DNA of 64,000 nt. Origin: Camelus dromedarius (Eukaryota). Shown piece after piece: positions 31,301-64,000 of this stretch. The notes beneath the pieces are model-generated. The model did no database searches. It saw nothing but the letters and a program-made list of their open reading frames with translations, and was not told the origin of the DNA. A program made the position numbers and the translations under genes. Where the stretch lies: assembly GCF_036321535.1 (NCBI RefSeq), contig NC_087443.1, forward strand, positions 18,290,001 to 18,354,000, read 5' to 3'. The first letter of the stretch is position 1; every line of letters begins with the position of its first letter.

Positions 31301-34300
31301 TGTGGAGAAGGCAGGTCTGGGTTTGAGTCTGGCTCTAGTACTTGGGGACCAGCTGGGGACACTGAACAAGTCCCTCACACGTCCCGAGCCCCAGTTACAT
31401 CCTGGGAAAAGCAGGGCTAGGACCCTGTAGGAGGAATGTGTGAACTGGAATTCCATTTTGGAAAGCGGGGAGGAGCTTACCCACAGGGGAGCCGTGCACG
31501 CAGGGAGGCCCCCTGTGCTTCGGTGGTAAAGCCTGAGGTTTGGGGTGGCTCTGTCCTTTCTAGATGGGTGATGCCGACTTGCTACTTAACCTCTCTAAGT
31601 CTCCATGTCTTTCCGAAGAAAAGGAGACTAGTGACAGATACTTCTCAGGGCTGTTACGAGGATTAAATGCAAGATTATATGTAAAGTGTTTCGCGGGCTT
31701 ACTACCTGGCTAGTGTTCACTGAGGACTTGTTTAGCCTCAGGCAATGCCCTGGCTGACTTCACATACGGTGTCTCATGAACAAAGGCAAGATGCCTTCAA
31801 GAATATCACTGGCCCCCAAACTGGGGTGCAGAAGCTGTGTGGCTGGAACACAGGGTGCGTGGGCGGGAACCACGGTACCACACGGGCATGATGTCAGAGG
31901 AGCCATGATGGCATTGTTTAGGCTGTGGGCTGTGCTCTAAGACAGTACGCCTCAAATCATACTGTACTGATAGCATCTCAGGCCATTTTCCTCAAGTGCA
32001 GACTTTGACTCAGGAGTCTGGGCCGGCGGTGCCAGAGGCTTTATGCAGCTGGTCCAGAACACCCTTCAAGTTGTAAAATTTTTGAAAGATCGTTCCTTCA
32101 GGCAACAGTGTGGAAAATGGATTGAAAGGGCTGAGACGGGAAGGGGAAACGTTGGGAGGCTGATGCAGTGTAAATCGAGGGCCTCTACTTTGGGAGGATG
32201 GAGAGGAAGGGCAGCTTTGAGAACTTTCAGCCTTCGAATCAGCAGACACTTAGTGATTTGATGGATAGAAAGAGTGAAGGAGAGACTGGTCCCTCAGACC
32301 CCTGGGAATTTCATCCAGGGCCCTGGTTACCTAGAATCCAGAGAGCTGGCCCTTACAGCTTTCTTGGCATCATTCTTAGAGCCCATCGTAAGATGTGAGC
32401 TATTACAACTGCCCAGATCTGGGCACAGCTTGGGTAGAATCTGTGTGAATGGACAATGCAGGTGTACCCAGGGCCCAAGTTCACCTGCTGCTCCAGTCTT
32501 CTTGGTAGCATCTGGCCAACAGGATGCCCAGCCCCGTGTGACGTCAGCCCCGTGTCCCCACTGGCCTTGCCCTGAACTGCCTCCCCCTTCCTGTACAGAC
32601 TTCCGTGTTCACTCCTGCCTATGGGTCCATGACCAACGTGAGAGTCAACAGCACCATGACCACTCTGCAGGTGCTCACCCTGCTGCTGAACAAGTTCCGA
32701 GTAAGTCTGGCCCCCTGCGGCCTTGCCCCAGATGCCGGTGGTTTGCTGTTGCATGGGGGGAGGGGGCTGGCAAGAGCCCTTGGCTCTTTGGGTAGAAGCA
32801 GGGAGGTTTCCTCTGCTGAGCTGGCGTCTCTGGAATTTAAGCAGAAGGAGGGGAGGGTCCCTGGGATTTGTGTGTGTGACACTGGGGATGTGATTACTGC
32901 CAGGGGTCCCTTTCTATCTCTCCTATATTGAAAAAGCCATGGCCTGACTTTCTGTCCCTGCCTGTGCAGGTGGAAAATGGCCCCAGTGAGTTTGCTCTCT
33001 ACATGGTCCATGAGTCTGGGGGTAAGTGTCTGCCTTTACTTCTTCATCAGAAAAACAAAAGTCTGTCCATTTGGCAAGCTCACTCTGTGTGCTCCTTCTC
33101 CGAGGGCTGGGCTGACTTGTGCGGCAGGCCCGGGGCAGCTGGCCCTCCTGGCCTTGGGACACGCTGTGCCCCCACATTGATCGCCCCTCCCAGGCCCAGA
33201 TCCAGGCACACTTGTCATCCCTTTCAGAGTGCCAGCAAAACCACGTGGGAAGCCGCTGTCTCCAGTAGGTTCAGCGGGGAGTGGGGAGGAGGGGCATCTG
33301 GGTCTTCGAGGTGGATCTGAAGCCCCTCGCCCACTGACACCTGCTGTTGCAGAGCCCACGCTGCACGACCCTCTGTGCACAGCCCAGGTCTGATCACTGA
33401 GTGGGCCTGGCCTCCGCAGGTCCACTTCCCATCTCCCGCTCCTTCGGCCTCTGTTTCTCCCCAAGCTGGGCCTTTGCAGAATGACGTGATCACACATCCT
33501 CAGGGCACTGTCTACCACACAACAGCTGGTGGTGTTGCCAGGACCCCTGGACATCTGTCTTCCATCTCATTCTGGTCCCGGAACAAAGACAAGTGTTCCT
33601 AATTTCCCATGAATTTTGTCTACAACCTCGTTTTTCAGAGCGGACAAAATTAAAAGACTGTGAGTACCCACTGATTTCCAGAATCCTGCATGGGCCATGT
33701 GAGAAGATCGCCAAGATATTCCTGATGGAGGCTGACTTGGGCGAGGAAGTCCCCCATGATGTGAGTGGGGGCTGGGGGGCTTTCTCCTGAGGGAGGGGCT
33801 GGGTGACAGCGTGGGGACTCCCAAGGACTCTTATGGTGACCTCGGGCAGAGCCCTCTTGGGCGGTGTTTCCAGGGGCCCCACGGCCGTCCTGAAGGACCA
33901 GCGCAGTGCTGATTCCAGCCCTTCTTCCTGTGAGACATCACCAGATCCATCCGCTGGCTTAGGGAAAAAAGATGTTGGGTCTTAGAAAATCATGGCCTGG
34001 CCTTTTCCTCTCTCAGGCAGGTAGTCTCTGGCTTCACTGAAGTGTGTTCTGTTGTTATAACATTAAAGATGTGGCCTGGTTAAGGGTTCCTTAACTAGGG
34101 CCTGATGGGGGCTTATGGAAAGGAACCTAAGGGTCTCTGTGTCTCAGGACAACCTGGGTCCTGGCTGGGCGATGAGCACATTTCCAGACTCCCCAGCACA
34201 GAAAAACCGACAGGGTGTGGACCCAAAGGAGCAGGCCTGGTGACCCTGTGTCCCTGTGCATTCACAGACTAGTGTAGTTTCATTCCATTGTTGGAAACAA

Positions 34301-35998
34301 TGCGTTCCCACCATCTCCTCCCCACCCCGCAGAGAATACCCAGTGTGACTCTGCTCACTATTAAATGCTTTTCCTAAAATTCAGCTGGATCTTTCCTCCC
34401 ACTGTTCAGAATTCCCTCTGAGGTCAGAATGGGCTCCAGCCTCGCGTCCTGGCACACACAGAACAGCGTTGCGGGTGGGAGACTAGAGGGCAGCCTCTTC
34501 CTTGGATATGAGACGTTGCCGAGTCGGCCATGCCATTGGCTCTGGAAGCCATGAGGAAAAGAAAACGTNNNNNNNNNNNNNNNNNNNNNNNNNNNNNNNN
34601 NNNNNNNNNNNNNNNNNNNNNNNNNNNNNNNNNNNNNNNNNNNNNNNNNNNNNNNNNNNNNNNNNNNNNNNNNNNNNNNNNNNNNNNNNNNNNNNNNNNN
34701 NNNNNNNNNNNNNNNNNNNNNNNNNNNNNNNNNNNNNNNNCGTGGGTCCTGCCCATCAGGGCAAGTCTGCAGGGCAGACGCCCCGGGCCCGGGGCTGGGA
34801 GAGCTCTCCCCTCCCGGAGTGCCGGGTGCCCTCATGCGGCTTGGGGAGGCCTGCTAACCGCCCTCTGGCCCCTGGCTTGAAATGGACACCAAGCTGGGGT
34901 GACAGCTGGCCATCTAGCCTCGGCACCTCACCAGCACGGGGCAGGCACAAGCTGTGAAAACTTGGCAGGAGAGTTAGACAGGAGCACGGTGGGCACTGGA
35001 CCTGGGTTGTGAGTTCTGCTGGTGACACTGTTCTGGAGGAGCGTCTGAGGAGGGGGCCTGCTCGCTGCATGTTTAGCCTGGTCTGGGCCTTTCATCCTTG
35101 CGGGAGTTCTGAGCCTGCCAAAAAGCAGCCGTTAGTGGGACTCCTTGCACCAGCCGATGTTTTCAGGTGCAGGGGACCAGTTCAATGGACAGGTGAACAG
35201 GTGTCCTGTGCTGGCTCCTGGGGAAGCTACATCAGAGCCCAGCTGTGTCAGCCAGGTTGCTCATCCCAGTGATCAGTCTCTCCATCTGTAGGGCAAAGCC
35301 CAGCCCCAGAGTTCCTCTTAGGGAGGGATTGAGGTAGGCTGCTCACTATCAGGGCCTGTGGCCAGCGGGCTGGTTCAGATTCTGCTTCTGGCTGAATAAT
35401 TCTTGGAAAGCCACAGCCCCCCAACCACCCCCACCCCAAGGCTTCTATCAGGGCCGTCAGGTCCCATTCAGGTAGTCTGCAGAGACCTCAATCAGAGGAA
35501 ATAGTCCACATGCAGTCAGCAGTGTCACACGAGCTGGAAAGGACCTGGGGGCCACCGGGTCAGTCTGGTCAGTGTACAGAGAAGAAACAGCCTGAGATGA
35601 GGAAGGAGGCAGCACCCCATGACCGCAGAGCCAGGGCCTGTCTACTCCCACACACTCCCATACTTACTGGAGAATCTTGCAATAGAAACGGCAGCATTCT
35701 GCTTTGAAGCTTGACAGGGTCTGCAGCCCTGTTTGACTGTTCCTAGAAGCCACTGGCCTCCCAGGATGCAGGCGTGGCTCCTCCCTCTCCTTGGCAGAGG
35801 AGAGATGGTGGCCACTAATCCACTAGTCGGGGAGCCATGGGTCTCCGGGCCCAGGCATCTGGGCGCTCTCTCCCTCTGCTTTCCCCTCCCTGTTCCCTCC
35901 TGTATCAGTGAGCCCTCTGGGCTGTGTCTCCTTCCAGGTTCCAAGCTCTGCGTCTGACAATGCTACAGCGCCTGGAGCAGCTGGTGGCGGCCAAGTAG
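13321..35998 (+). CDS. RASSF4: Ras association domain family member 4 (spliced; 321 aa if the 98-nt exon 10 lies in the N gap)
   Basis: join(13321-13382,15550-15625,26619-26761,28145-28236,28904-29061,32599-32700,32970-33021,33639-33760,[98 nt in gap],35938-35998). All GT-AG, phases consistent, 868+98=966 nt. Matches remembered human RASSF4 (RA domain; SARAH C-terminus). Confidence 0.97.
13678..13832 (+). mobile_element. camelid-type tRNA-derived SINE
   Basis: A-box-like 'tatagcttaggggtagag'; B box GGTTCAATCC at 13733-13742; A-rich tail with 'aacctaattacc'; target-site duplication AAAAACTAG at 13669-13677 and 13833-13841. Confidence 0.9.
14546..14857 (-). mobile_element. MER33-like hAT-Charlie element
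   Basis: 'agccaccagccacgtgtggct' end and 'atgataatattttagatatattggg...catgtggctactagaacattt' match remembered MER33. Confidence 0.75.
15550..15625 (+). CDS. RASSF4: RASSF4 exon ([25 protein letters not shown])
   Basis: tttttag|G ... GAA|gtaagg; 76 nt. Confidence 0.95.
17477..17659 (+). mobile_element. MER5A MITE
   Basis: 'gtggttctcaac...cagcagcttcagcatcacctgggaactggttagaa...gaatcagaaactc...aagtttgagaac'. Confidence 0.85.
19536..19557. repeat. (CT)11 microsatellite
   Basis: Read directly. Confidence 0.9.
20133..20234. repeat. about 100-nt polypurine tract (GA/GGAA/GAAA mix)
   Basis: Read directly; one pyrimidine (C20219). Confidence 0.9.
21248..21253 (-). terminator. DEPP1: AATAAA polyadenylation signal just after the DEPP1 stop
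   Basis: + strand TTTATT; minus strand reads TGA-cccctcccc-AATAAA. Confidence 0.45.
21263..21889 (-). CDS. DEPP1: DEPP autophagy regulator 1 (C10orf10), 208 aa, single coding exon
   Basis: [17 protein letters not shown]...SLDDYVRSI...[13 protein letters not shown]...LHLPVIHEL matches remembered DEPP1; PTS2-like RLLLSVAHL; acceptor caacag| at 21917/21916, upstream of the ATG. Confidence 0.97.
   Translation of the reverse strand: MRSRLLLSVAHLPTIRETSEEMLPGVPGEEPPASPSLDDYVRSICQLAQPTSVLDEAAARARPSRPHRPARSCEKSRPTGSLRDITTRFSGQQPALPGASPADPLDWLFGESQEKRPSRRDLPRSTAPSADPWASCRQMDSGKAQGAPRGRLCDARAPGHSLGRPSRNWRQCSQASRQCGQDAASPTSPRPRSVLRTLYLHLPVIHEL
22438..22630 (-). other. DEPP1: DEPP1 non-coding exon 1 (TSS approximate)
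   Basis: Minus-strand donor CAG|GTAAGA at 22438/22437; TATA box about 25 nt upstream of the inferred start. Confidence 0.65.
22655..22814 (-). promoter_or_regulatory. DEPP1: DEPP1 core promoter: TATAAAA (22655-22661) and forkhead site GTAAACA (22808-22814)
   Basis: Motifs read directly; DEPP1 is an established FOXO target. Confidence 0.6.
25270..25515 (-). mobile_element. 5'-truncated L1 3' end
   Basis: T-rich tail followed by 'attgaagtatatatagtcagtttacaatgttgtgtcaatttctggtatacagc...', a cetartiodactyl L1 3'UTR. Confidence 0.85.
26619..26761 (+). CDS. RASSF4: RASSF4 exon ([28 protein letters not shown]...)
   Basis: ccccacag|GAA ... CC|gtgagt; 143 nt. Confidence 0.95.
28145..28236 (+). CDS. 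RASSF4: RASSF4 exon ([18 protein letters not shown]...)
   Basis: ttttag|G ... G|gtaagg; 92 nt; phases fit both neighbours. Confidence 0.9.
28904..29061 (+). CDS. RASSF4: RASSF4 exon ([10 protein letters not shown]...[15 protein letters not shown])
   Basis: ctgcag|AG ... AAG|gtgatg; 158 nt. Confidence 0.96.
32599..32700 (+). CDS. RASSF4: RASSF4 exon, RA domain ([34 protein letters not shown])
   Basis: gtacag|ACT ... CGA|gtaagt; 102 nt. Confidence 0.97.
32970..33021 (+). CDS. RASSF4: RASSF4 exon ([17 protein letters not shown])
   Basis: gtgcag|GTG ... G|gtaagt; 52 nt. Confidence 0.96.
33639..33760 (+). CDS. RASSF4: RASSF4 exon ([41 protein letters not shown])
   Basis: tttcag|AG ... GAT|gtgagt; 122 nt. 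Confidence 0.97.
34569..34740. other. assembly gap (172 N), expected site of RASSF4 exon 10
   Basis: Ns seen. The SARAH-helix exon (remembered as VAQYIKFEMPVL...KLTMK) is absent from the readable sequence between the flanking exons. Confidence 0.8.
35938..35998 (+). CDS. RASSF4: RASSF4 last coding exon ([19 protein letters not shown])
   Basis: cttccag|G ... TAG; 61 nt. Confidence 0.96.
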
Positions 35999-48969: not shown

Positions 48970-49424
48970 CAGGCATGTCTNNNNNNNNNNNNNNNNNNNN
49001 NNNNNNNNNNNNNNNNNNNNNNNNNNNNNNNNNNNNNNNNNNNNNNNNNNNNNNNNNNNNNNNNNNNNNNNNNNNNNNNNNNNNNNNNNNNNNNNNNNNN
49101 NNNNNNNNNNNNNNNNNNNNNNNNNNNNNNNNNNNNNNNNNNNNNNNNNTTAAAATTATTGCTAAAAAAATGCTATCATCTGAGCCTCCAGTGAGTCATA
49201 GCAATAACATCAAAGATCACTGATCACAGGTTACCATAACAAATATAATAGTGAAGAAAATTTGAAACATTGCAAGAATTGCCAAAATGGGACACAAAAC
49301 ACCAAGTGAACAAGTGCTGTTGCAAAAAATGGCGCTGACACACATGCTCAACACAGGGTTGTCACAAACCTTCAATTTGTTGGAAAAAAAAATCAGTAAA
49401 AGCACAGTGAAACAAGGTATGCCT
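48970..49424 (-). mobile_element. internally deleted Tigger1 (second copy; contains the 170-N gap 48981-49150)
   Basis: TA|caggcat ... aaggtatgcct termini; internal sequence colinear with the copy at 38885. Confidence 0.8.
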
Positions 49425-52100: not shown

Positions 52101-53699
52101 ACAGGCCTAGTAATTATTCCCCTCAGAGGAGTCTCTCATCTCACCCAGCATCCAGACAACAGAGCTTCCTTAGTGAGTAAAATGTTTTCTACTCAACCTT
52201 CTATTAGGGGCATAATCCATCCACAGACTGGCTTTATGTGCGTTTATGTCTGCACCCTTGATCCTTCCTCTTCTCCCATCAAAAGGAGTGAAGCTCGGAA
52301 AGATGCTCACCTGGTTCTGTGGACCAATAGCAGGGCCCCCTCCCCCACAGCTGACACATTGGGTCACAAACTGGAGCCCTGTTCGCCCTTCCTCTTCACT
52401 CTGAGGCCTCTCCTTTTCTCTCTCCTGAGCCTGGCCAGACCATCCCACATCTGGGTGTTTGCAGAACAAGGGTGTTTGGACTGTGTGGTCTACATTTTGC
52501 CTGGACCAGGAGCTGTCATATCCTTAGCAGTTGCAACCTGCTTTGTTAACAGTGAGAAAACACATAGGCATTGAGCAAACAATAATCTTTTGTGGGGTTT
52601 TTTAGTGTAGTATTTTTTCATGCTTTCTATACGTGAAAAATAATTCTGCTTCTCTATTACTGTATTTTAAAGTATAATAAAATAAAATTTTAAAATAAAA
52701 TAAATTTAAGAATTCTGGGAAGATGGCCATGGTCATGGACACATAGTTTTTGTCTTCCAGAATCTCCACATAAACACAGAGCATAAGGTATTAAAACCAA
52801 AACCCATGGGCAATATTGATAACAAATTTAGATTACAAGGTATTCTCCCGTTACCACAAAATACAAGTGGGTGGGTAACAGCCATGAGTCCTGCCCGATA
52901 TCTCATAAGTCTGAGCAAAGTAGACTTAGCAAGTAAACAGATGCCTGAGGGCCTTGCGCGTGCTCAGTACAGTAGCAAAAACAGCATCCCCCCACTTCCC
53001 AGGAGAGCCCCACTCATGCGCGGTACAGAGGCCTAATTAGGACCAACAGCAGTGCCTTGAGATTGTTCAATGCAGAAGTCAGGCAAGGACTTGCCACTAA
53101 ATCGTAGAGGAACTTGGTTCATGCCACCAGTGACTGAGGCATAGATTTTAATCCTTGATTTCATCTTGGTTTTTAAAACTAATTCATCAGCTTTGCAGGC
53201 TATCGGGGTAGCAATTCATTATCTTGATGATGGATAAATAAATGAAAAAAAAGAAGCATCTAAACAGCCTTTCCTCTATGAACCATTTCAATGGGTGACC
53301 AAACAGTAGATGAAGGAAAGTGTCCCTTTACATTATTAAACCAGCTGATAAATGAAAAAGGAATGATGTAATTACAATAATCATCATTCTTCACCCCAAA
53401 TGGATTAACCAATGTAAGCACTGAACATCATTGCTGCTAACATCTCAAAAATAGGCAGGTAACCTGACATTATTTGTTCCTTGATGAAAAAGCACATCAA
53501 TATATAGGGTCTTATCAAACATCTTGATCCTGAGTCTGATCAAGCCTCTGAATACAGCTGAAAATCTGCAGGAAATGGAAATAAGAGAGGGATGGATTGA
53601 ACTGCATCTTGAGAACACAGTCTGCAAAGTCCATACTGGGAAGTCCTATGGGGAAAGGGCCCAGGCTCGTCCATGGATACAGGATAAGAAAGAGAAAGG

Positions 53700-54500
53700 G
53701 GTGGAGAAGGAACTTACAGACTAAAAGAGATTTAAAGACATCAGCACAATGAGCAAGCCTAATCTATAGGACCTAGAGAGGCACACCAGGGTGATAAGAA
53801 CAATAAAGAAACTCAAGGAGAGTAATAACTATAAAAATCAGGACAGTGAGTAGTTTTGGGAGGAGGGAGCTGGTTGAGATTGGGTTGGGGCACAGGGAGG
53901 GTGTGCTGGCTTGGCTGGAAAAGTACAGTTGATTGGCCTGGATGGTGGTTACAAGAGTGTTCTTCTTTTTTTTTTTTTAATGAGGTATAGTTGATATACA
54001 ATATTATAGTAGTTTCAAGTGTTCAACATAGTAATTCAGAATCTTACAGATTATACTCCATTTAAAGTTATTTAAAATATTGGCTATATTCCCTGTGTTG
54101 TACAGTGTACCCTTGTAGCTTATTTATTTACTTTTAAATTTATTTTTAAATCTCAAAATATTTATGCTCAGTAAAAGCAGCCAGATGCTTTCTGCAGTAC
54201 AGAAAGATGTCATTCATATTAAATGCTGTGTTATCTACAGTGGAAGAAAGCAGATTACTGTTTGCCTAATGACTGGAGGGAAGGAGGGAGGTGTGGATTA
54301 CAAAGAGGCATGAGGAAACTTCAGGGGGCAATGGCTATGTTTTTAATCTTAATTAGGTTGATTTTCTGGGTATATACATATGTGAAAACTGAGTGAAATA
54401 TACACTTTAAATATGTGCACTGTTTTGTACCTCATTTGTCCATCCATGAACTTGTGAATAAAGAAGCACAGACTGAATGATGTGGAGCAGTATTTCTCCC
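53700..54500. mobile_element. old L1M 3' end (+) interrupted by a younger L1 3' end (-, about 53960-54140)
   Basis: 'ggcatgaggaaacttcagggggcaatggctatg...cactttaaatatgtgcac' old L1 3'UTR; poly-T plus 'gaggtatagttgatatacaatattat' younger L1. Confidence 0.65.
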
Positions 54501-54879
54501 ATCTTTGCTGGTGTTAAGACGCCCCTGGTGCTGTGGAAAGTCCACACTCCTGGTCCTGCTGCCGAGTCTTCCAGGAAGCACCAGGTGAATTGTGCTTTCA
54601 GCAAGGGCTACATGAATAAGTTTCTGGAAAACAAAAGTTACCAAAATTAAATCTAGAAAATATAAAACTCTGTGAACAGTTGTCTTTCTTGAAAGAATTG
54701 TGAAAGTTGGTCACACATCCACCTCGGGTGGCCTGAGATGCTGGTTCTTTTGAGTTGTTTGAAAGCTTGGCAGCTATTTTACAAAGGTAGCTTCACCCCA
54801 CCCCAGCATCCACCAACACCCCCAGGATGAAACTGGGGCTTGTTTAAGTTTAAAACACACAAGTAAACATTCCTATAGA

Positions 54880-56320
54880 CACAGAGCTTATTTGTTTTAT
54901 ACTTAGTAGTTTGTGTCTCTTAATCCTTTACCCCTTCTTGGCCCTCCCCCCTTCCCTCTCACCACAAGTAAGAACTAGTTTGTACTCTATATCTGCGAGG
55001 CTATTTTGGTTTTATTATATATGTTCACTTGTTTTATATTTCAGATTCCACATGTAAGTGATAACATCCAGTATTTGTCTTCTCTGTCTGACCTATTCCT
55101 CTAAGCATAATATCCTTCAGGTCATTCCATGTTGTTTCAAATGAAAAATGTCAGCGTTTTTTATGGNNNNNNNNNNNNNNNNNNNNNNNNNNNNNNNNNN
55201 NNNNNNNNNNNNNNNNNNNNNNNNNNNNNNNNNNNNNNNNNNNNNNNNNNNNNNNNNNNNNNNNNNNNNNNNNNNNNNNNNNNNNNNNNNNNNNNNNNNN
55301 NNNNNNNNNNNCAGTTACTTAGATTGCTTCCATTTTGGGGCTGTTCTAAGTAATACTGTTATAAACATTGGGATGCAACTATCATTTTGAACTGGTGTTT
55401 TTCTTTTCTTCAANNNNNNNNNNNNNNNNNNNNNNNNNNNNNNNNNNNNNNNNNNNNNNNNNNNNNNNNNNNNNNNNNNNNNNNNNNNNNNNNNNNNNNN
55501 NNNNNNNNNNNNNNNNNNNNNNNNNNNNNNNNNNNNNNNNNNNNNTCCACTTCCTCACAAACATTTGTTATTTGTGATCTTTTTGATGATGGCCATTCTG
55601 GCAACTGTGATGTGATATCTCATTGGGGTTTTGAGGTGCATTTCTCAGATAATTAATGATGTTGAGCACCTGTTCATGTGCCTGTTGGCCATCTGGAGGT
55701 CATTTTCGGAAAAATGTCTATTCAGACCCTGTGCCCATTTTTTAATGAGGATTTGTTTGTTTGTTATTGAGTTGTGTGAGCTCTTTATATATTTTGGAAA
55801 TTACCCCTAATCAGATCTGAATTGCAGATATTTTCTCCCATTTCATTCCTCACCTTTTCAGATTGTACATTGTTTCCTTTGCTGTGCAGGAGATTTTCAG
55901 TTTGATGTAGTCTCAGTTGTTAATTTTTGCTTTCATCTCTTCTGCTTTTTGGAGTCAGCACCAACAATTTAAAACTAAATCTGACGTTAAGGAGCTCACT
56001 GCCTAGTCTTTCTTGGGGTTAAATTATTTCAGGCCTTCTATTCAAGGCTTTATCCATTTTGACTTCCTTTCTGTGTATGATATAAGATAGCAGTCCAGTG
56101 TGTTTCTTTTGCATGTAGCTGTCCAGTTTCCCCACACTATTTATTGTAGAGACTGTCCTTTCCCCTACTGTGCATTTTAGGCTTCTTTGTTGCACATTTC
56201 TTGACCATACATGTGAAGATTTATTTCTGGGCTCTGTATTCTGTTCCATTGATCTGCATATCTGTTTATATGTCAATACCTTTGGGTCACTACATTTTTG
56301 GCTTGCTTTCTTCTTCTCTA
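54880..56320 (-). mobile_element. L1 3' region with two N gaps (55167-55311, 55414-55545)
   Basis: Antisense L1 ORF2/3'UTR wording: 'gatggccattctg...gtgatatctcattggggttttg...catttctcagataattaatgatgttgagcacc'. Confidence 0.85.
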
Positions 56321-57189
56321 AATACCACCTGGAAAACCAGCAGTGGGGCAGAGCCCCCAAGGGCTGTGGGCCCTTTTTCTGGAGTTGACAAGGGGCTATA
56401 GAGCCAGCTGGGCTCACCTGCAAGCCAGTTGCAGGATAAGACATGGGACTGGGGACCTGAGGTTTCCTAGAGTCCCAGCTTCCTGCCACTTCCCAGGCAA
56501 ATACTGAGGCATATGCAGCCAGACTGCATCTCCTAGAGCTATGGAAAGAGCCCTGGGGGAGGAACTGAGGGCCCAGGGCAGAGCGACCTCCAGGTGTACC
56601 TTCTTTGAGGTACACCTCAAGAAGTCATCCAGGTAAAGAGCTCAATGGGCTCCCAGCCTGGGGATTTTGAAGATGCAGAAGGAGATGGTCCTGAGAAGAA
56701 CAGATAGAGTCCAGTGTGGCTGAACCAAGGGGAGCAAGGCCAGGTGGGCTGCTGGCAGGAGGAGGGCCTTCAGGTCTGGCTGAGGATTGGGGCTTGTCCC
56801 CAAATGCCCGAGAGATTTCTTATGTGTTAGCACAGAGACCCAAACAGATGTATCTTTTCAATATCCCTGTATTGGATCAAAGGGAGTGAGAAATGGAAGA
56901 AAAGAGCATGAATCTGGGACAGTGTCAGTGGTGGCCTGGACAGGGAGGGGGAGGGAGATTCAGAGAGGTGATGAAAGCATTTGAAGTTGGGACCCAGGGA
57001 CAGAGGAGGAGCCAACTGCATGTGGAGTGAGGAAGAAAGAGGGAGCAGACAGAGTCCCAGGTTCTGGTTTGAGCCCATTGGGAGATGGAGCTGCTGCAAG
57101 GATATGGGGAGGGGTGGGAAGAGAGTTCCAGAAGGCAGCTTGGGGCCACTTAAACCTTGGACGCTTATGAGATTAGATCAGTTCTGATA

Positions 57190-57880
57190 CACTTTATTAT
57201 TTCCTGGAAGTAGATTTGATTTACAGTGTTGTATATGTTCCTGGTGTACAACATACTGCTTCAGTTATACATGTATATATATTCTTTCTCATATTCTATT
57301 CCATTGTAAGTTATTACAAGTTACTGGATATATTTCCCAGTGTTACACAGTAGGTCTTTGTTGTTTATCAATTTTGTACATACTATTGCATACGTGTAAT
57401 CCCACACTCCTACTTTATCCCTTCCCACCACCACTTTCCCCCCTGGTAACCATAGATTGTTTTCTATGTCTGTGAGTCTGTTTCTGTTTTGTAAATAAGG
57501 TCATTTGTATCACTTATTTGTTTGTTTGTTTCCACATGTAAGATATAAATTTATCTTACTCTGAATTACTTCACTAAGTATGATAATCTCTGCATGCATT
57601 CCATTTACCTGGAAATAATATTATTTCATTAATTTTTTATGGCTGACTAGTAATCCATGGTGTGTATAGGCCACATCTTCCTTATCCATTCATCTGTCGA
57701 TGGACATGTACTTTGCTTCCACATCTTGGCTGTTGTAAATACAGCTGCTGTAAACATTAAGGAGTATGTCTGGGAAACCTAGAAATTATCATATTATGTG
57801 AAGTAAGTCAGACAAAGACAAATTATATGTGATATAAATAATATGAGGAATCTAAACAAATGAGAAAATGAATATGACTT
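57190..57880. mobile_element. L1 3'UTR (-, to about 57770) joined to a short inverted L1 fragment (+, about 57775-57880)
   Basis: 57569-57591 and 57781-57803 are inverted copies (19/23) of the same L1 3'UTR segment. Confidence 0.75.
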
Positions 57881-59062
57881 TATAATGAAACCACTGGGAA
57901 AAACCGCTTCCCAGGGGGTTTCAAGCAAGCGGCGGTACACGGATGATGAAAAATACTCTGTTCATGATGACCCAGACGCTAATTATACTGCACTTGGAAC
58001 TGGATAAAACCTGACAGCAAGCCCGAGACTTGGGGAGAGTCATTTAAGAGTAGGAACAGGAAGGAAGTAGCAAATAACATTGACAAGCCCAATGGTGATG
58101 GCAGCCATCATCTGACTGTCAGTCCCTGGGCCACTGTGGGTACAGCCAGAGAAATTGAGCCAGACAGGCTGAGTGACTGCTAAAAGGGACAGTCTCCTGC
58201 CTCCAGCACAGTGGCACTGAGTGTGGACAGTGAAGCCAGACACTGTGTGATCTCAGCTCCAGCCCTGCTACCTGAAGGCCTTGAGTCATGAACTCTGACC
58301 TCCTAGCCAGGGCCTCAGCCCCTCTCGAGTTTGCTCTGGAAATTAGAAACCCTCAGACCTCAGGATGCTCTTGTCCATCCCTCCTGTGTAGGGGAAGTTT
58401 TCTGCTGGCCACACAGAGTGGGCGAACTGGCTTTATCACACACACACGCACAAAGACACAATCACAAAGACACACACATACACACACGTGAACCACTGTA
58501 CATTGAATAAGGATGATGGGGGGATCATAAGAGGAACACACATGGAGGAGGAAGTCAGAGGAAGATAACTTGGGTCGCAGGCAACACCTCCAGGTGACAT
58601 CACTCTCCAATTTTTTAGGCCTTATTCCACTTACACCTGAGGACATCACTAGAAGTACTTGGTAGAATCATTCCCACTGTGCAGCTGGGGAGACACACCA
58701 ACCTGGACACAAACCAAGAGTTACTCAGGATGGAGAACAGGTAAGAATGAGGAGTGCAGTCTGGAAGCCAGGGCGTCTACTCACAGCTGCATGCAGACCC
58801 TCTCAGCAGCAATAGGGATGGCAGGGCTGCTGTAACTGTGGAAGAGTTGGGTTTGCATGGTGAAGGCGGTGAGCAGACAGCAGTCCAGAGGGCTGTGTGT
58901 TCAGGTGTTGTCTGAGGAAGGGGTTCCAGGAAGTGGACCGCAGGAAGTCACATCACATCCTTAACAGACCCCAACCGAAATGGAACCTGGTTACCAGGCA
59001 CCCACATTCTAGTGATGGCCCCAGAGCCAGTGCACATGGCTGGAGACAGTGGAAGACACAGG

Positions 59063-59200
59063 ATGTTCTCCTCTTGTTTCCCGGTCTCCCAGGGCTTCTC
59101 CGCCAGGAAGCCCTGGACTGCGAGGTTCTTCGGTGGCTGTAGGCGTCTGTGGAACCCTCCACCCAGGCGCCTGTGGCCTATTTTGAGGAGGTCACCTAAG
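59063..59200 (+). CDS. RALGDS-like coding exon 1 (MFSSCFPVSQG...RRLWPILRRSPK)
   Basis: ATG 59063; AAG|gtaaca; 138 nt; N-terminus typical of this paralogue family. Confidence 0.75.
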
Positions 59201-62200
59201 GTAACACAGGGTGGCCTGGAGAAGGCCAGTCTGGGACTGGTCTCCATCAGTGTCCCTCCCTGGACAGACCCACTTCCCTCATCTCCATGTCAGAGAACAG
59301 GGACTTGAGGGGAGGTGTCCCCGCTGGGCAGGAATGCCTTATTGAACGCTTGGTAAACTTGTGGTCCTGTCATGGCCGCACCCAAGGACAGGGCTGATAA
59401 GGGGCAAAGAGGACTCCTGAGGGGCATCTTCTCTGTGTCAATGGGAATACAAGGCTCCCACTTTGTCAGCTTTTCTGCCCCTGAAGGAGGTCTGTGCAGA
59501 CAGTGGTGGATGTGTGTCAGGACTGCAGATGACTTATGGGTCGGAGAACCAGACAGGGCTCTGAGGCTCCTGCCTGGCCTCTGGGCCCTGTATTTACAGG
59601 ACTCAACACATGGGATGGGACAGGACCTGGTCCATGGAGATCCCCGCTCCACCTCCCTGCAGGAGGCGCAGGTGCCCCACGACAGCAGCAGAGCCCAGGA
59701 CGTGCTCAGGGTGAGTGCGAGAGAGGAGACTCCACACCCAGGAAGCCCCAAGCCCACTGCTGCCCCAAGGTGCCTCTTAGAGACCTGCTGGCAAAGGAAT
59801 CTGATGCCCCATCTCCCCCACCTGCCCTCACAGACCAGGAACTGACTTGGGCAGATGCAAAGTCAGTGACCACATATGAGTGTGAAACTCAGAAAGAGAC
59901 TTGGACAAAACTTCAGTCTATGTAAAGTCAAGGATATTTCCGCATTTTCTACATGTTGCCCTGATTCTTCTCCATCCCGACGTGTCCACATTAACCTGAA
60001 AATCCTGAGCCCTCCCACCCCAGGCTCAGCCGCTGTGTTCTCATCCCTAGAATGGGATGTTGTGACCCGCAGGCACAGGGATGAAGTGGTGCATGCAGGG
60101 AGGGGCCGGCACTGCGGTGCTGACACAGGGATCTGAGACACTGATGCATTTCACCATCGCCCTTCGCCCCTGGTACTGGTGGTGCTGAGAATCTTGGATC
60201 TGCTCAGGGCTCCCCTGTTCCACCTCAGGCACAAGAGCTTGAGGCTTGAGGATTCGGTCTAACCTCCAGCCCCAAGTGCCTGGGGGTCCCCGGTGCTGCC
60301 TCTGACTCACGTCTCTCCTCTTTCCACCCCAGGGGGGAGCTGGACCATCAGGGAGCAGGGATGAGGCCTACAGGGCGTGGAGCCTCCAGCGACACAGGCT
60401 GGAGAAGCTGGTGGCAAAGCTGGTGCCTGCCGTCCTGGGCGGCCACCCCTCCTATGTGAACACATTTCTGGGCAGTTATCGAACATTTGCCACCGCCCAG
60501 CAGGTGCTGGACCATCTGTTCCGAAGGTGAGCACTCTGTCTTCATGGGACATTGGGGACCTGGCCACCTACCAGCAGTGCCATGAGGCATTGTTCCTCTA
60601 CCTCTTTAAGCCTCAGTTTCCCCTCTGCACACTGGGGTCAAGAGAGGATCAGGCCCTAGGAGGGTAGGAACAGAGGGAGACCTTCATGGAAGGTGCTCTC
60701 CGGGGACCTGGCTCACGGAAAGGGCAGCTGGCAGGGCTGTGGTTGTGCGAATTTGTCGTTGTCCTCCTGCCCAAGAGCTAGCGTCTGCCTCCTGTGTCAC
60801 TGGGACTTTGGCCTTGGGTGGAACTGTTTTCCCATTTCAAAGGGGATCTGTGACGCCATTAGCTGTCCCTGTCCTGGGAGAGTGAGAGCAGGGATCCCTG
60901 GGAGGGACAAGTGGGGTCCCAGGCCCACTCAGATGTGCGCTGTGGGGCCGGGTGGGCTCACTCACTCATTCCCCCAATGTATAGGAAGGGCCCCCAGGGA
61001 CAGGGGCTTTTCTAGGAACAACCATCATTTAATGCATCGAGCAGACATCAGCCCTGCCCTCCAGGGCTTCCATTCTCTCGGGTGTCACACTGTCACACTA
61101 GACAGCACATCCAGCTAGTGTGCTCGGGACAGTCCATGTGATGCCTTCCTGCTCTCCTCTAGATACGGATGCATCCTCCCTTTTACTGAGGAGGACGGGG
61201 GACCCCTGCACCAGCTGAAACAGTGAGTCTCTTGGATTGAAGCGGGAAGGACTCCTTCCCCAAACAGTGTGTGAAGCTCTGGGCTCTCTGGTTGGGCAGA
61301 GGTGGGCGGAATCCTGGATCCCACCTATCCTGCGAGTCTGGCTTGAGAGCAGAAGTCCTAGGGCTTCCCCTGGCAAAGAGGAGACGAGACCCAGAGAGCT
61401 GTGGGTGGGACTGTGGCACTGTGAGGGGCATCTGGGAGGTCAGAGGACAGAGTCAAAACTGAAGAAAACCCACAACCATCCCCTATCCATCCCATCCCTG
61501 CCCTCATGCACTTTGGGAGGCACAGAACACAAGGGGTGGAGAGCATCCTGCCCACCATCAAGTGGAGCCTCAATGATGGGGACTCAGCTGCTGCTCAGGG
61601 GACCCAGTGAGCCTCAGGGGACAGCTGAGCCCATCCTGATGTTGCTGAGTGGCAGGGGCAGAAGGAGACCCAGGCAGGGTCCCTGGAGGATTCTGCAGCC
61701 AGCAGGTGCAGGAGCTAAAGTCTGAGGAGTGTGGAGGCCCGTGGGCAGCCTGGAAGGCCGACACAGCCTGTCTGTTCCCTCCTGGCTCAGGCACTCATAG
61801 AGCAGCTCCCGTGTCCCTTAGAGGGCAGTGCCCAGAGCGCACAGCCTGCCTGTCCTCTCAGAGGTGCCATCCAGTGGGGAGGGGCAGGGAGAGGGACATA
61901 GCAGTGTGACAGGTGTCCCTGAAGCGGTGGACAGGTGGTCACACCATTGAGCCAGGGCTGTCCCTTCAGAAGGCTGGTAGCAGCGCGTCCTCTGTGTCCA
62001 AGCCCGCCTCTGCCCACACTGCCAGCTGAGATGGGACATGGAGCAGAGCCGGCCTCTGGATGGGCAGGAGCCAAAGGCAAAAAGGCCCAGGTCCCCGCAG
62101 AGCTACCCTGGGAGCCCAACGTGGTAGGAAAGGCCAAGCCTCTGACTCTGGTGTCCCCCTGACTAACCCCAGGGCCATGGCCTCCATCCTGGGCACCTGG

Positions 62201-63376
62201 CTGCTCCAATTCCCAGACGATTTCCACCAGCCTCCAGAATTCCCATGCCTTAAGACCATTGTCACTTACGTAGAGCTCAGCATGGCTGGCTCAGACCTGG
62301 AGCAGCAGGCCCACCTCCTCCTGACACAGCTGGAGCAACTGGAGCTCCCAGAGGCAGACAGTGACGGTGAGCAGGATGCAGGGTGGGGGATCTGGTGGGT
62401 GAGGGGGGGGAGGCACTGGACCACACAGAGCAGAGTCTGGGAAGACTCCCTGGGGGTGGAATCATGGAGTGAGAGTTGATTGAGTAGCAGTGAGGGCTCC
62501 CCTGGCTTTGGGAGACACGTGGGAAAGCAGTCCTATTGATAAGAGTTTCCCTTCTTGGAGCTACAGCACCAGCTCCAGAACCCGCTGGGGAAACCCCTCT
62601 GCATGGAGAGCCAGCTCCAGCTCTCCTGCCTGCGACAGCGCCAGAGCCAGAGTCAGACACAGAGCCAGAGCAGAGGGACGTGCTGTAAGTATCAGTCAGG
62701 CTCTGCTGCCTCCCGTCGCCTTCAGGGCCGGGACGCCCACTGTTCTTGAGGTGTCTGTGATTTACAATTCCGGATTATTCTTAGAGGTGATAACATATTC
62801 CTTGCGGCCTGTTGTGTCTGTGTTTTATTCTTAATATAAACATCAAAGTGCCCTACATGTCTCTGTTTGGATAGACTCACTCCTCTGCACCAGACACACA
62901 GGGCGGGGATGTGGACAAGTGACCCCAGCACGTTCCCACTCTCTCCCTGCAGGTCCTGTGAGGCAGCGGCCTCCTCTCTCTTGTCTGCTGTGGACCCAGG
63001 GCCCAGCTCAGGGCCTCCATCAACACTCCCTGAGACCCCACCCTTGGTAAGTGGCCGGTCATGTCATGATCAAGACAAGGACTTAGAAGGCAACCCCAAA
63101 TTTTGATCTTAGAGGATTGGTTTTTGTCCAGCAGTAAGACTGATGTTGTGTTTGTGTGAATGTTGCCTGTTTGTCCGACATCCATGGAGCCAGCAGCTCA
63201 CGTGCCATTCCCCATACGGCCACCAGAGGGAGGGGTGTCACTGCTTCTGAGAAACACTGTTCCATTCCAAAGTGCTCCTTCCCAATTTAGCCCTCCTCAG
63301 AACATGTTTTAGAGAGTGAGGATTTCTTTAAGCTATAGAGGTTTGGTTTTTTTCTTCAATCTCGTTTCAGGTCTAA
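59063..63376 (+). CDS. RALGDS-like (ral guanine nucleotide dissociation stimulator-like) gene, REM domain only, about 304 aa
   Basis: join(59063-59200,59600-59710,60333-60526,61163-61222,62173-62366,62567-62684,62953-63046,63371-63376). All GT-AG, frame open. LEKLVAKLVPA, YRTFATAQQVLDHLF, YGCILPFTEEDGGPLHQLK and ASILGTWL..DDFHQPPEFPCLK match remembered RALGDS. Last two exons are less certain. Confidence 0.85.
59600..59710 (+). CDS. RALGDS-like exon 2 (DSTHGMGQDLVHG...STSLQEAQV...)
   Basis: tttacag|GAC ... AGG|gtgagt; 111 nt, same length as remembered RALGDS exon 2. Confidence 0.8.
60333..60526 (+). CDS. RALGDS-like exon 3 (REM domain)
   Basis: ccccag|GGG ... AG|gtgagc; 194 nt. Confidence 0.9.
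61163..61222 (+). CDS. RALGDS-like exon 4 (YGCILPFTEEDGGPLHQLK)
   Basis: ctctag|A ... CA|gtgagt; 60 nt. Confidence 0.9.
62173..62366 (+). CDS. RALGDS-like exon 5 (AMASILGTWLLQFPDDFHQPPEFPCLK...)
   Basis: ccccag|G ... G|gtgagc; 194 nt. Confidence 0.92.
62567..62684 (+). CDS. RALGDS-like exon 6 (Pro/Ala/Glu-rich linker)
   Basis: ctacag|CA ... CT|gtaagt; APAPEP...APEPE resembles the RALGDS linker; read-through gives TAA at 62686-62688. Confidence 0.75.
62953..63046 (+). CDS. RALGDS-like putative exon 7 (SCEAAASSLLSAVDPGPSSGPPSTLPETPPL)
   Basis: ctccctgcag|G ... TTG|gtaagt; phase matches exon 6; no homology recognised. Confidence 0.55.
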
Positions 63377-63519
63377 GCTCAAACACAAGTTGGCCACTGA
63401 GTGGAAGTTGTCCCTTGGGATACACAGACATGTGTTATTCTGTGTCCAGCCCCCATCTGTGTCCACCTCTGTCCCTTCCTCTCTCCCTACAGCCGTCTGT
63501 GTTTGTAAATATCTATTTA

Positions 63520-63525
63520 AATAAA
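63520..63525 (+). terminator. AATAAA, candidate polyA signal of the RALGDS-like gene
   Basis: About 150 nt after the acceptor tttcag|GTC TAA (63370/63371); GT-rich sequence downstream. Confidence 0.5.
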
Positions 63526-64000
63526 AGACTTTGACAATCAGTGCAATGTAGTAGAGATATTTTAATTCATGTTGCCTTGTGTGCGTGTGATGTAGATTTG
63601 GGTAGAAAGAGGTCTGCTCACAGGACAGTGGGGTTGTCCCTGAATCCCTAGGAGACAATTAAAGTGGGGCAGCAGGTCTCAGTGGGAGTCACTCACCGGG
63701 GAAGATCTCCTGCTCAGCACAGCCAAGGTGGGTCCTCATGGACTTCTATCCCCAGAGCACTGAGTCTGCTTTCGCCTGGGGCGCTTTGCTACAATCCTGT
63801 GTATCCTAAAGTGTCAGAAGAAAGAACAGTGATGATAAGAACTGTGGGAGAGGGACAGGTTTTGATTTCAATTACCTGCTCCTCTACCTACAATGGCTTT
63901 CCTTGGATTGTATTATAACGAACGCTCAGCCACGTGGGAGCAGAGTCTATGCATGGTTTTGAGTATATTACAAGTCTCCAGCCCAGCACTTGGCCAAGAA

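What the first reader, a model, noticed from the sequence alone, without database searches (positions are those of the whole stretch)
59063..63545. Intact RALGDS-like gene that appears to encode only the REM half, with no CDC25 catalytic or RA domain
Seen: 7-8 exons with canonical splice sites and an unbroken frame. All three routes I traced past exon 5 stop early: TAA at 62686 (272 aa), TGA at 63104-63106 (322 aa), or GTC-TAA at 63371-63376 followed by AATAAA at 63520 (304 aa). No CDC25 exon is recognisable up to 64000. Known: RALGDS is REM + linker + CDC25 + RA, RGL4 is essentially CDC25-only, and many mammals carry poorly studied 'RALGDS-like' LOC paralogues. Inference: this may be a REM-only non-catalytic scaffold or decoy, or a partner in trans of CDC25-only paralogues. 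An open frame and preserved splice sites despite heavy amino-acid divergence argue against a simple dead pseudogene.
Basis: partly seen in the sequence, partly recalled or inferred. Interest (0 to 1): 0.75.

Follow-up and report, generated by a model that had tools for sequence, protein, structure and literature searches.

The report
REM-only RALGDS-like gene, ancestral copy
This is a real, intact camel gene descended from the Ral activator RALGDS that keeps only the regulatory REM domain and has no catalytic part; databases already annotate the family, but nobody seems to have studied what it does.

Summary
The product has a REM (RasGEF_N) domain between two disordered arms. I found no CDC25 or RA sequence in the 64-kb window, nor in seven homologous loci that reach 7-10 kb downstream.

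RNA contigs from two studies show every splice, including exon 7 to exon 8, which reads GTC-TAA. Their letters fit paralogues rather than this copy, so expression of this copy is not shown.

[quoted passage not shown] It is 98.8% identical to Camelus ferus XP_032347608. This scan already reported the family's 11.8-kb tandem array 2.7 Mb away.

New here:
- This copy lies downstream of a RASSF4-like gene, and its upstream flank is collinear with a pig REM-only gene. It is therefore probably the ancestral locus.
- Camel versus pig dN/dS is 0.48 (p = 0.0015), with dS 0.49 and no disabling mutation.
- Its exon-1 peptide recurs in longer kangaroo-rat and tamandua relatives that still have CDC25, so REM-only is a derived truncation.

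Function is unknown. Interest is moderate.

The parts
53146..57944 (+). Upstream flank collinear with the pig REM-only gene's upstream flank. It marks this copy as the syntenic, ancestral locus.
   Evidence: Five ordered blocks at 69-75% identity to L007 1334-8176. They are absent from the camel and alpaca array and solo copies L001, L002 and L004.
58095..64000 (+). Segment shared with all other camelid copies, that is, the duplicated unit. The homology runs off the window end.
   Evidence: blastn to L001, L002 and L004-L006 starts at 58095-58216.
58986..59062 (+). Probable 5' UTR
   Evidence: Spliced RNA contigs in X1 and X2 reach back to 58986/58987. Contigs cannot fix a start, and these contigs carry paralogue letters.
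59063..59200 (+). Exon 1. It holds the ATG and a 46-aa family-specific N-terminal peptide.
   Evidence: The peptide is shared with pig, cattle, kangaroo rat and tamandua relatives. A loose end at 59201 reads on into exon 2.
59372..59710 (+). Alternative start: ATG at 59372, open in frame into exon 2. It corresponds to the C. ferus 334- and 352-aa isoforms.
   Evidence: ORF 59372-59845; P0201 residues 1-116 align at 93%.
59600..59710 (+). Exon 2
   Evidence: joint 59710>60333 in X1 and X2.
60333..60526 (+). Exon 3, the start of the REM domain
   Evidence: Pfam RasGEF_N 34.5 bits; joint 60526>61163.
61163..61222 (+). Exon 4, REM domain
   Evidence: joint 61222>62173.
62173..62366 (+). Exon 5, the second half of the REM domain
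   Evidence: 66% identical to RALGDS residues 192-238; 306 library proteins at E<=0.001.
62567..62684 (+). Exon 6, Pro/Glu-rich linker. Read-through of its donor reaches TAA at 62686.
   Evidence: joint 62684>62953. It holds an in-frame indel hotspot at 62664.
62953..63046 (+). Exon 7, linker. Read-through of its donor reaches TGA at 63104-63106 (322-aa form).
   Evidence: P0151 residues 273-322 are 100% identical to 62954-63103.
63371..63545 (+). Exon 8: GTC-TAA at 63371-63376, 3' UTR, AATAAA at 63520-63525
   Evidence: Joint 63046>63371 in X2 at depth 218, and a variant form in X1. AG acceptor, TAA and AATAAA are conserved in 7 copies. A second signal, ATTAAA, lies at 63658.
60100..60101 (.). 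Sharp switch in similarity to the C. ferus array copies: 82-95% identical upstream, 99.3-100% downstream
   Evidence: Sliding identity in 300-nt steps.

Best explanation
An intact, intron-containing gene encodes a roughly 300-aa non-catalytic protein. The protein has a disordered N-terminal arm (exons 1-2), one helical REM (Ras exchanger motif) domain (exons 3-5) and a disordered Pro/Glu-rich tail (exons 6-7). It ends at a one-codon terminal exon (V-stop) followed by AATAAA. With no CDC25 domain it cannot exchange nucleotide on Ral or Ras.

It is a truncated descendant of an old placental paralogue of RALGDS. That paralogue still carries CDC25, with or without RA, in kangaroo rat and tamandua. 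The window's copy sits downstream of a RASSF4-like gene and is collinear with a pig REM-only gene. It is therefore the founder locus, and the camelid 11.9-kb tandem arrays derive from it. Its 3' two-thirds appear to have been homogenised with array copies recently.

What is shown: the gene structure, the domain content, the absence of CDC25 and RA, the splicing pattern of the family, the synteny, and moderate purifying selection.

What is inferred: if the protein acts at all, it acts by binding. The REM surface normally packs against a CDC25 helical hairpin, so the protein could modulate or sequester CDC25-type RalGEFs or Ras-family GTPases in trans.
For: - Exon model and frame.
- Pfam RasGEF_N on exon 3 and on the near-identical protein P0151, 52.1 bits over profile positions 6-103 of 106.
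- AlphaFold model of P0151: residues about 88-228 are helical at pLDDT about 90 and the rest is disordered. The model superposes on the SOS1/2 REM domain with Z about 10 and rmsd 3.2-3.8 A over 112-123 residues. Foldseek's top hit is the Rlf REM-CDC25 structure 4jgw.
- RNA contig joints exist for all seven introns, including 63046>63371.
- No CDC25 or RA hit in the window or in loci L001-L007; best E is 0.28.
- Family members of 280-350 aa with RasGEF_N only occur in camel, alpaca, cattle, pig and degu.
- The upstream flank is collinear with pig.
- dN/dS is 0.48 against pig, with dS 0.49 and p = 0.0015. Against alpaca it is about 0.5 overall: 0.1-0.3 in the N-terminal arm, 0.3-0.5 in the REM domain and about 1 or more in the linker.
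- All splice sites, the ATG, the stop and the polyA signal are conserved in 7 copies.
- The exon-1 peptide is shared with Dipodomys P0196 (REM+CDC25) and Tamandua P0121 (CDC25+RA).
Against: - At every listed position that tells this copy from its paralogues (59036, 59051, 59091, 59398, 59405, 59520, 59526), the RNA contigs carry the non-window letter. Transcription of this copy is therefore not shown.
- Constraint is weak, and the tail evolves neutrally.
- Between camel and alpaca, indels are too rare (5 in 3075 intron nt) for frame integrity to say much.
- There is no protein-level evidence, and I found no functional study.
- The sequence beyond 64000 of this assembly was not seen.
- The window's own spliced protein was not joined, searched or folded. 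P0151, with 4 differences in 322 residues, stood in for it.
Confidence: 0.75

Rival explanations
1. Transcribed relic. The locus is the decaying 5' stump of a once full-length RALGDS paralogue. Its frame persists through gene conversion with array copies and through chance, and the product has no function.
For: - REM-only is a derived truncation.
- Omega is only about 0.5, and about 1 or more in the linker.
- Camel and cattle proteins are only 53-55% identical.
- There is no copy-specific RNA.
- The 3' part is homogenised with array copies.
- No literature was found.
Against: - At dS 0.49 from pig there is no stop or frameshift in the aligned exons, and omega differs from 1 at p = 0.0015.
- The REM domain is 68-70% conserved between camel and cattle or pig, against 30-55% for the arms.
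- All 14 splice dinucleotides are kept in 7 copies.
- The family's transcripts are abundant and correctly spliced.
Confidence: 0.2
2. Window-edge artefact. The gene is a normal REM+CDC25(+RA) exchange factor whose catalytic exons lie beyond base 64000.
For: - The window ends 624 nt after the stop codon.
- One alpaca isoform (P0160) does splice from the exon-7 donor to an exon about 730 nt beyond the window-end equivalent.
Against: - That extra alpaca exon encodes 85 aa with no Pfam domain.
- No CDC25 or RA similarity appears within 7-10 kb downstream in L001-L007, and in the arrays the next unit follows.
- RNA joints end at exon 8 with an immediate stop, and the AATAAA is conserved.
- RefSeq models in four species are REM-only.
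Confidence: 0.03
3. Assembly chimera. The abrupt change at about 60100 arose because reads from array copies were assembled onto the RASSF4-side locus, so the intact 3' half belongs to another copy.
For: - There is a sharp switch from 82-95% to 99.3-100% identity with the array copies.
- The older C. ferus contig L003 is visibly mosaic here.
Against: - Two independent assemblies place a complete copy downstream of the RASSF4-like gene.
- Pig has a complete gene at the collinear site.
- Gene conversion explains the same pattern.
Confidence: 0.05

Closest known systems
[quoted passage not shown]
   Same: They share the eight-exon structure, the exon-1 peptide, a single REM domain and the same ends (..ETPPLV, or read-through to ..GNPKF). 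P0151 differs from the window's product at 4 of 322 residues.
   Different: Those copies sit in 11.9-kb tandem arrays. This one has a unique upstream flank next to a RASSF4-like gene and a diverged promoter, exon 1 and exon 2 region.
Pig RALGDS-like gene (P0193, 282 aa, chromosome record NC_010456.5 at 87.3 Mb)
   Same: REM-only, with the same exon-1 peptide and a collinear upstream flank. It is the likely orthologue.
   Different: Identity is 50-84% per exon. No exon-2 match was found, and the C-terminus differs.
RALGDS (REM + CDC25 + RA Ral exchange factor)
   Same: The REM domain is 65% identical. Exon 2 and the Pro-rich linker are also recognisably homologous.
   Different: The window gene has no CDC25 domain and no RA domain, and its first exon is different. 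It cannot be an exchange factor.
Longer RALGDS-like paralogues of kangaroo rat (P0196, 528 aa) and tamandua (P0121, 802 aa)
   Same: They share the family-specific exon-1 peptide, with local alignment scores of 68 and 62.
   Different: They keep CDC25 (P0196), or CDC25 plus RA (P0121). They probably show the state before truncation.
REM domain of SOS1/SOS2 and Rlf (solved REM-CDC25 structures)
   Same: The same helical fold: Z about 10 and rmsd 3.2-3.8 A over SOS1 residues 603-746, with Rlf 4jgw as the top Foldseek hit.
   Different: In every solved structure the REM domain packs against a CDC25 domain of the same chain. Here that partner is missing. Sequence identity is only 16-20%.
RGL4/Rgr and RalGPS1/2 (RalGEFs described as lacking a canonical REM domain; from my own knowledge, not tested here)
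   Same: Their architecture is complementary, which is why a trans partnership is conceivable.

Membership tests
REM / RasGEF_N domain proteins (Pfam PF00618) | Profile match above the curated gathering score | tested here: met
   Exon 3 alone scores 34.5 bits against a cut-off of 28.3. The near-identical P0151 scores 52.1 bits over profile positions 6-103 of 106.
REM / RasGEF_N domain proteins (Pfam PF00618) | Helical REM fold superposable on solved REM domains | tested here: met
   The AF2 model has pLDDT about 90 over residues 88-228. Z is 9-10 against the SOS1/2 REM domain, and 45 of the top 46 rows are SOS. The Rlf hit has Foldseek probability 1.00. Z is below the tool's caution level of 13 for helical folds, so the fold evidence is supportive rather than decisive on its own.
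CDC25-type Ras-family exchange factors (RALGDS, RGL1-3, SOS) | CDC25 homology (RasGEF, PF00617) catalytic domain | tested here: not met
   tblastn found none in the window or in L001-L007, using CDC25 parts of four relatives; best E was 0.28. Pfam found none in the family proteins, while the controls P0031, P0196 and P0069 were positive.
RALGDS family | C-terminal RA (Ras-association) domain | tested here: not met
   No RA hit belongs to this gene. The only RA-coding exons in the window belong to the upstream RASSF4-like gene.
RALGDS family | Descent from RALGDS, shown by specific sequence similarity | tested here: met
   The REM domain is 65% identical to RALGDS P0031. RALGDS-type proteins dominate the library hits.
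REM-only RALGDS-like family (database-annotated LOC genes) | Family exon-1 peptide, a single REM domain, termination inside the Pro-rich linker, about 280-350 aa | tested here: met
   Alignment A1 with camel, alpaca, cattle and pig members; Pfam.
REM-only RALGDS-like family (database-annotated LOC genes) | Transcribed and spliced as modelled | tested here: inconclusive
   All joints are seen in RNA contigs of two studies, but the letters at discriminating sites fit paralogues rather than this copy.
Processed pseudogene | Intronless copy of an mRNA | tested here: not met
   Seven GT-AG introns are present.
Unitary or duplicated pseudogene | Stops, frameshifts or lost splice sites; omega near 1 | tested here: not met
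   No disabling change was found. Omega is 0.48 against pig, p = 0.0015.
Unit of the camelid 11.9-kb tandem array | Flanked on both sides by further units | tested here: inconclusive
   No unit or array spacer lies upstream of 58095. Downstream is beyond the window. In the older C. ferus contig L003, array-type spacer and a further copy start follow.

The most novel reading that the evidence does not exclude
Cetartiodactyls have kept a free-standing REM domain protein at one syntenic locus for some 60 million years, and camelids have amplified it into arrays. It would be a trans-acting regulator of Ral/Ras exchange factors. It would dock on CDC25 domains, above all those of GEFs that lack their own REM domain, or on GTP-bound Ras-family proteins. 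That would make it a split-GEF or decoy layer of Ral signalling, possibly in reproductive tissue.
Probability: 0.12. Interest if true: 0.7.

Novelty: new member of a known kind. Interest (0 to 1): 0.4.

Why it matters
REM domains are known only as built-in partners of CDC25 catalytic domains. A conserved protein made of a REM domain alone would be a natural test of whether REM can work in trans as an activator, inhibitor or sensor.

For this window the practical gains are threefold. The odd-looking truncated gene is real and already has database relatives. This copy, not the tandem arrays, appears to be the ancestral locus. The family can be traced to a full-length paralogue that other placental orders still keep.

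This gives a clean set of orthologues (camel, pig, probably cattle) for selection tests and a defined construct for binding and exchange assays.

Tried and rejected
- **PDB sequence searches.** Exon 5 and P0151 found nothing, and exon 3 gave only E of about 1 to SOS. The fold search was needed instead.
- **Raw-read RNA run X21.** No reads were laid, so it is no test.
- **Exact-protein look-ups.** P0151, P0179 and P0188 found no locus, because only the longest isoform is on record. P0201, P0007, P0156, P0180 and P0193 worked.
- **Alpaca L001 as orthologue.** Rejected, because its flanks are not collinear with the window.
- **Frame integrity between camel and alpaca as evidence of function.** Rejected as weak, because introns show only 5 indels in 3075 nt.
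- **RNA evidence for this copy's expression.** Rejected after comparing letters with the paralogues.
- **Literature.** Searches for RALGDS-like, REM domain and Ralgdsl found only gene lists: rat Ralgdsl11 in PMC13477028, an elephant paralogue in PMC7806701 and tree-shrew RALGDSli7 in PMC11879083.
- **Family tree.** I did not build a tree of REM domains, so single versus repeated origin outside cetartiodactyls is unresolved.
Full report

Yes. Reading 58800-64000 and translating the proposed exons in phase gives seven coding exons:
- E1 59063-59200
- E2 59600-59710
- E3 60333-60526
- E4 61163-61222
- E5 62173-62366
- E6 62567-62684
- E7 62953-63046

Every acceptor is AG, every donor is GT, and the frame has no stop.
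- Read-through of the E6 donor meets TAA at 62686 (272 aa).
- Read-through of the E7 donor meets TGA at 63104-63106 (322 aa).
- Splicing E7 to the AG at 63369-63370 gives GTC-TAA at 63371-63376 (304 aa), with AATAAA at 63520 and ATTAAA at 63658.

There is no CpG island at the 5' end.

**2. Domain content**

- Exon 3 alone passes Pfam's RasGEF_N gathering score, 34.5 against 28.3 bits.
The database protein P0151 (Camelus ferus XP_032347608, 322 aa) served as proxy. It differs from the window's product at four residues: R10Q, T52M, A81V and I199V.
- P0151 matches RasGEF_N over profile positions 6-103 of 106 and matches nothing else.
- An AlphaFold model built from a 26-sequence alignment folds residues about 88-228 into helices at pLDDT about 90. 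Residues 1-86 and 230-322 are left disordered.
- The folded part superposes on the REM domain of SOS1/2 (SOS1 residues 603-746) with Z 9-10 and rmsd 3.2-3.8 A over 112-123 residues.
- Foldseek's best hit is the Rlf REM-CDC25 structure 4jgw, but no Foldseek match reached E 0.001. Z is below the tool's caution level for helical folds, so Pfam carries most of the weight.

**3. Is the catalytic half merely beyond the window?**

I think not, for four reasons.

(a) A full-length RALGDS (P0031) served as positive control, with RasGEF_N, RasGEF and RA all found by Pfam. It hits only its REM residues 117-238 in the window on either strand. The same holds in seven homologous loci:
- two alpaca loci (L001, L002);
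- the older C. ferus contig collinear with this window, which reaches about 7 kb past the window-end equivalent (L003);
- three C. ferus array units (L004-L006);
- the pig locus with 10 kb of downstream flank (L007).

Repeating the search with the CDC25 and RA parts of three closer relatives gave nothing better than E = 0.28.

(b) RNA contigs from two independent studies were laid on 58001-64000. X1 is labelled reproductive system. X2 comes from another study and organism label. The contigs show joints 59710>60333, 60526>61163, 61222>62173, 62366>62567, 62684>62953 and 63046>63371, and a loose end at 59201 reads into exon 2. The listed loose ends at the E7 donor all read the start of exon 8; ten further loose ends were not displayed.

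(c) RefSeq models of relatives in C. ferus, C. dromedarius, C. bactrianus, alpaca, cattle, water buffalo and pig are 280-366 aa. Where Pfam hits are on record or were run here, they show RasGEF_N only. P0151 and P0201 end ..GNPKF, which is route 2.

(d) The AG acceptor of exon 8, the TAA and the AATAAA are conserved in all seven camelid copies compared.

One qualification applies. An alpaca isoform (P0160, 390 aa) splices the E7 donor to a further exon at L002 15705-15959, about 730 nt beyond the window-end equivalent. It adds 85 residues with no Pfam domain and is not CDC25.

**4. Whose RNA is it?**

About half of the laid contigs are 95-99% rather than 99% or more alike. I compared the variant letters with the paralogues.
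- At exon 1 and the 5' UTR (59036, 59051, 59091) and in intron 1 (59398, 59405, 59520, 59526), every listed contig carries the non-window letter. In intron 1 these are exactly the letters of the C. ferus array copies.
- From 60101 onward the window and the array copies are nearly identical, so RNA cannot be assigned there.

The RNA therefore proves the family's splicing pattern but not expression of this copy. Contigs drop rare variants, so absence is not shown either. The raw-read run X21 laid no reads and is no test.

**5. Where does this copy stand in the family?**

Earlier notes of this scan (s1-175373, s1-175372) describe an 11.8-kb tandem array of 298-aa REM-only genes 2.7 Mb upstream in the same genome. 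I confirmed such arrays independently:
- C. ferus CM020778.1 at 62.57-62.62 Mb, with units 11.94 kb apart;
- alpaca CM108730.1 at 8.0 Mb.

The window's copy is different.
- Homology to all array and solo copies starts only at 58095-58216.
- The sequence upstream is collinear at 99.2-99.8% with the older C. ferus contig L003. There, an RA-domain gene next to a DEPP gene precedes the RALGDS-like exons. From my knowledge of human 10q11.21, this pair looks like RASSF4 and DEPP1.
- That RA gene's exons lie at window 26698-33829.
- The 4.8 kb upstream of the gene (53147-57944) is collinear, in five ordered blocks at 69-75% identity, with the upstream flank of a pig REM-only gene (P0193, L007). The camelid array and solo copies lack this flank.

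So this copy is most likely the ancestral, syntenic locus and the arrays are derived. Cattle P0188 lies on a 45.9-Mb chromosome record. I did not test its synteny.

**6. A sharp switch at about 60100**

In 300-nt steps, identity to the three C. ferus array units is 82-95% from 58300 to 60100 and 99.0-100% from 60101 to 64000, apart from one step of about 97.5% at 62201-62500. Recent gene conversion of exons 3-8 between the founder locus and the array is the simplest reading. An assembly chimera is the alternative, and I could not exclude it.

**7. Selection**

Camel against alpaca copies, by Nei-Gojobori counts made exon by exon on whole codons without joining exons:
- Overall dN about 0.04, dS about 0.08, omega about 0.5. 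Intron divergence is 0.05-0.06.
- By region, omega is 0.1-0.3 in the N-terminal arm, 0.3-0.5 in the REM domain and 1 or more in the linker. Counts are small and the pairs are not independent.
- Indels are too rare in introns (5 in 3075 nt) for frame integrity at this distance to mean much.

The stronger test is the syntenic pig gene. Over 612 aligned sites, dS is 0.49, dN is 0.24 and omega is 0.48. The binomial p against neutrality is 0.0015, and there is no stop in either species. Exon 2 had no pig match, and exon 7's only hit lay on the minus strand, so both were left out of the counts.

At protein level, the camel REM domain is 68-70% identical to cattle and pig, against 30-55% for the arms. 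This is relaxed but real constraint on a fast-evolving protein.

**8. Origin**

- The REM domain is 65% identical to RALGDS. Exon 2 and the linker are also recognisably RALGDS-like.
- Exon 1 is not found in RALGDS. It recurs in pig and cattle REM-only proteins, in a kangaroo-rat protein with REM plus CDC25 (P0196, 528 aa), and in weaker form in a tamandua protein with CDC25 plus RA (P0121, 802 aa).
- The REM-only state is therefore best read as truncation of an old placental RALGDS paralogue. No CDC25 remnant is left at the loci examined.

**9. Mechanism**

Shown: the product cannot be an exchange factor, and it is one REM domain between two disordered arms.

Inferred: in all solved structures the REM domain buttresses the CDC25 helical hairpin of its own chain, and in SOS it helps form the allosteric Ras-GTP site (established knowledge of SOS). 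A free REM could therefore bind CDC25 domains or Ras-family GTPases in trans, as an inhibitor, a helper or a sensor. I give this about 0.12-0.2. A protein with some other binding role, or with none, is equally open.

I found no functional literature. The family appears only in gene lists: rat Ralgdsl11 in PMC13477028, an elephant paralogue in PMC7806701 and tree-shrew RALGDSli7 in PMC11879083.

**10. Verdict**

The gene is REM-only and not a dead pseudogene.
- It is not new as a kind. The family is annotated in RefSeq, and this scan has already reported it on other DNA of the same genome.
- This report adds the ancestral-locus assignment, the pig orthology with omega 0.48, the link to full-length relatives through exon 1, the conversion boundary, and the caution that expression of this copy is unproven.
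- Interest is moderate (0.4).

Noticed in passing
window 26698-33829 (+): Exons of an RA-domain gene. In the collinear C. ferus contig L003 it lies next to a DEPP gene, and from memory of human 10q11.21 it looks like RASSF4. An old C. ferus model (P0180, CB1_000037001) wrongly fuses these exons with the RALGDS-like exons and duplicates exon 3.
   Followed up: partly
window about 60100: Abrupt change in identity to the C. ferus array copies: 82-95% upstream and 99.3-100% downstream. This suggests recent gene conversion of exons 3-8, or an assembly join.
   Followed up: partly
window 63806-63807: Several RNA contigs in X1 and X2 stop matching here and run on for up to 255 unlike letters. Homology to pig also ends at 63807, while the C. 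ferus array copies continue to 64000. It may be a structural difference among paralogues or the edge of a repeat. Unexplained.
   Followed up: no
L002 15705-15959 (alpaca), about 730 nt past the window-end equivalent; homologous at L004 15620-15916: Alternative terminal exon of alpaca isoform X1 (P0160/P0155). It is 85 hydrophobic residues with no Pfam domain. In camel copies the homologous stretch aligns along its whole length at 73% amino-acid identity but is not annotated as an exon.
   Followed up: partly
window 61222>62567 joint: A minor exon-5-skipping joint in run X2 at depth 31.5. Exon 5 is 194 nt, so skipping it shifts the frame and removes half of the REM domain.
   Followed up: no
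P0006 (C. ferus XP_032346429): A RefSeq protein named 'forkhead box protein C1-like' starts with RALGDS-like exons 4-6 and runs on into a Gly/Arg-rich frame. It is probably a mis-named chimera over the GC-rich spacer of the array.
   Followed up: no
L007 1334-6530 and 19469-22289 (pig): Part of the pig gene's upstream flank recurs about 19 kb downstream, so the pig locus may itself be tandemly duplicated. Further pig RALGDS-like proteins (P0192, P0223) lie on the same chromosome record.
   Followed up: no
window 62664: In-frame length variation among copies in the Pro-Glu repeat of exon 6: a 12-nt gap against L001, two adjoining gaps summing to 6 nt against L002c, and 6 nt between those two alpaca copies. 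It is the only exonic indel site.
   Followed up: yes
window 34569-34740, 48981-49149, 55167-55311, 55414-55545: Four N runs of 132-172 bases.
   Followed up: no
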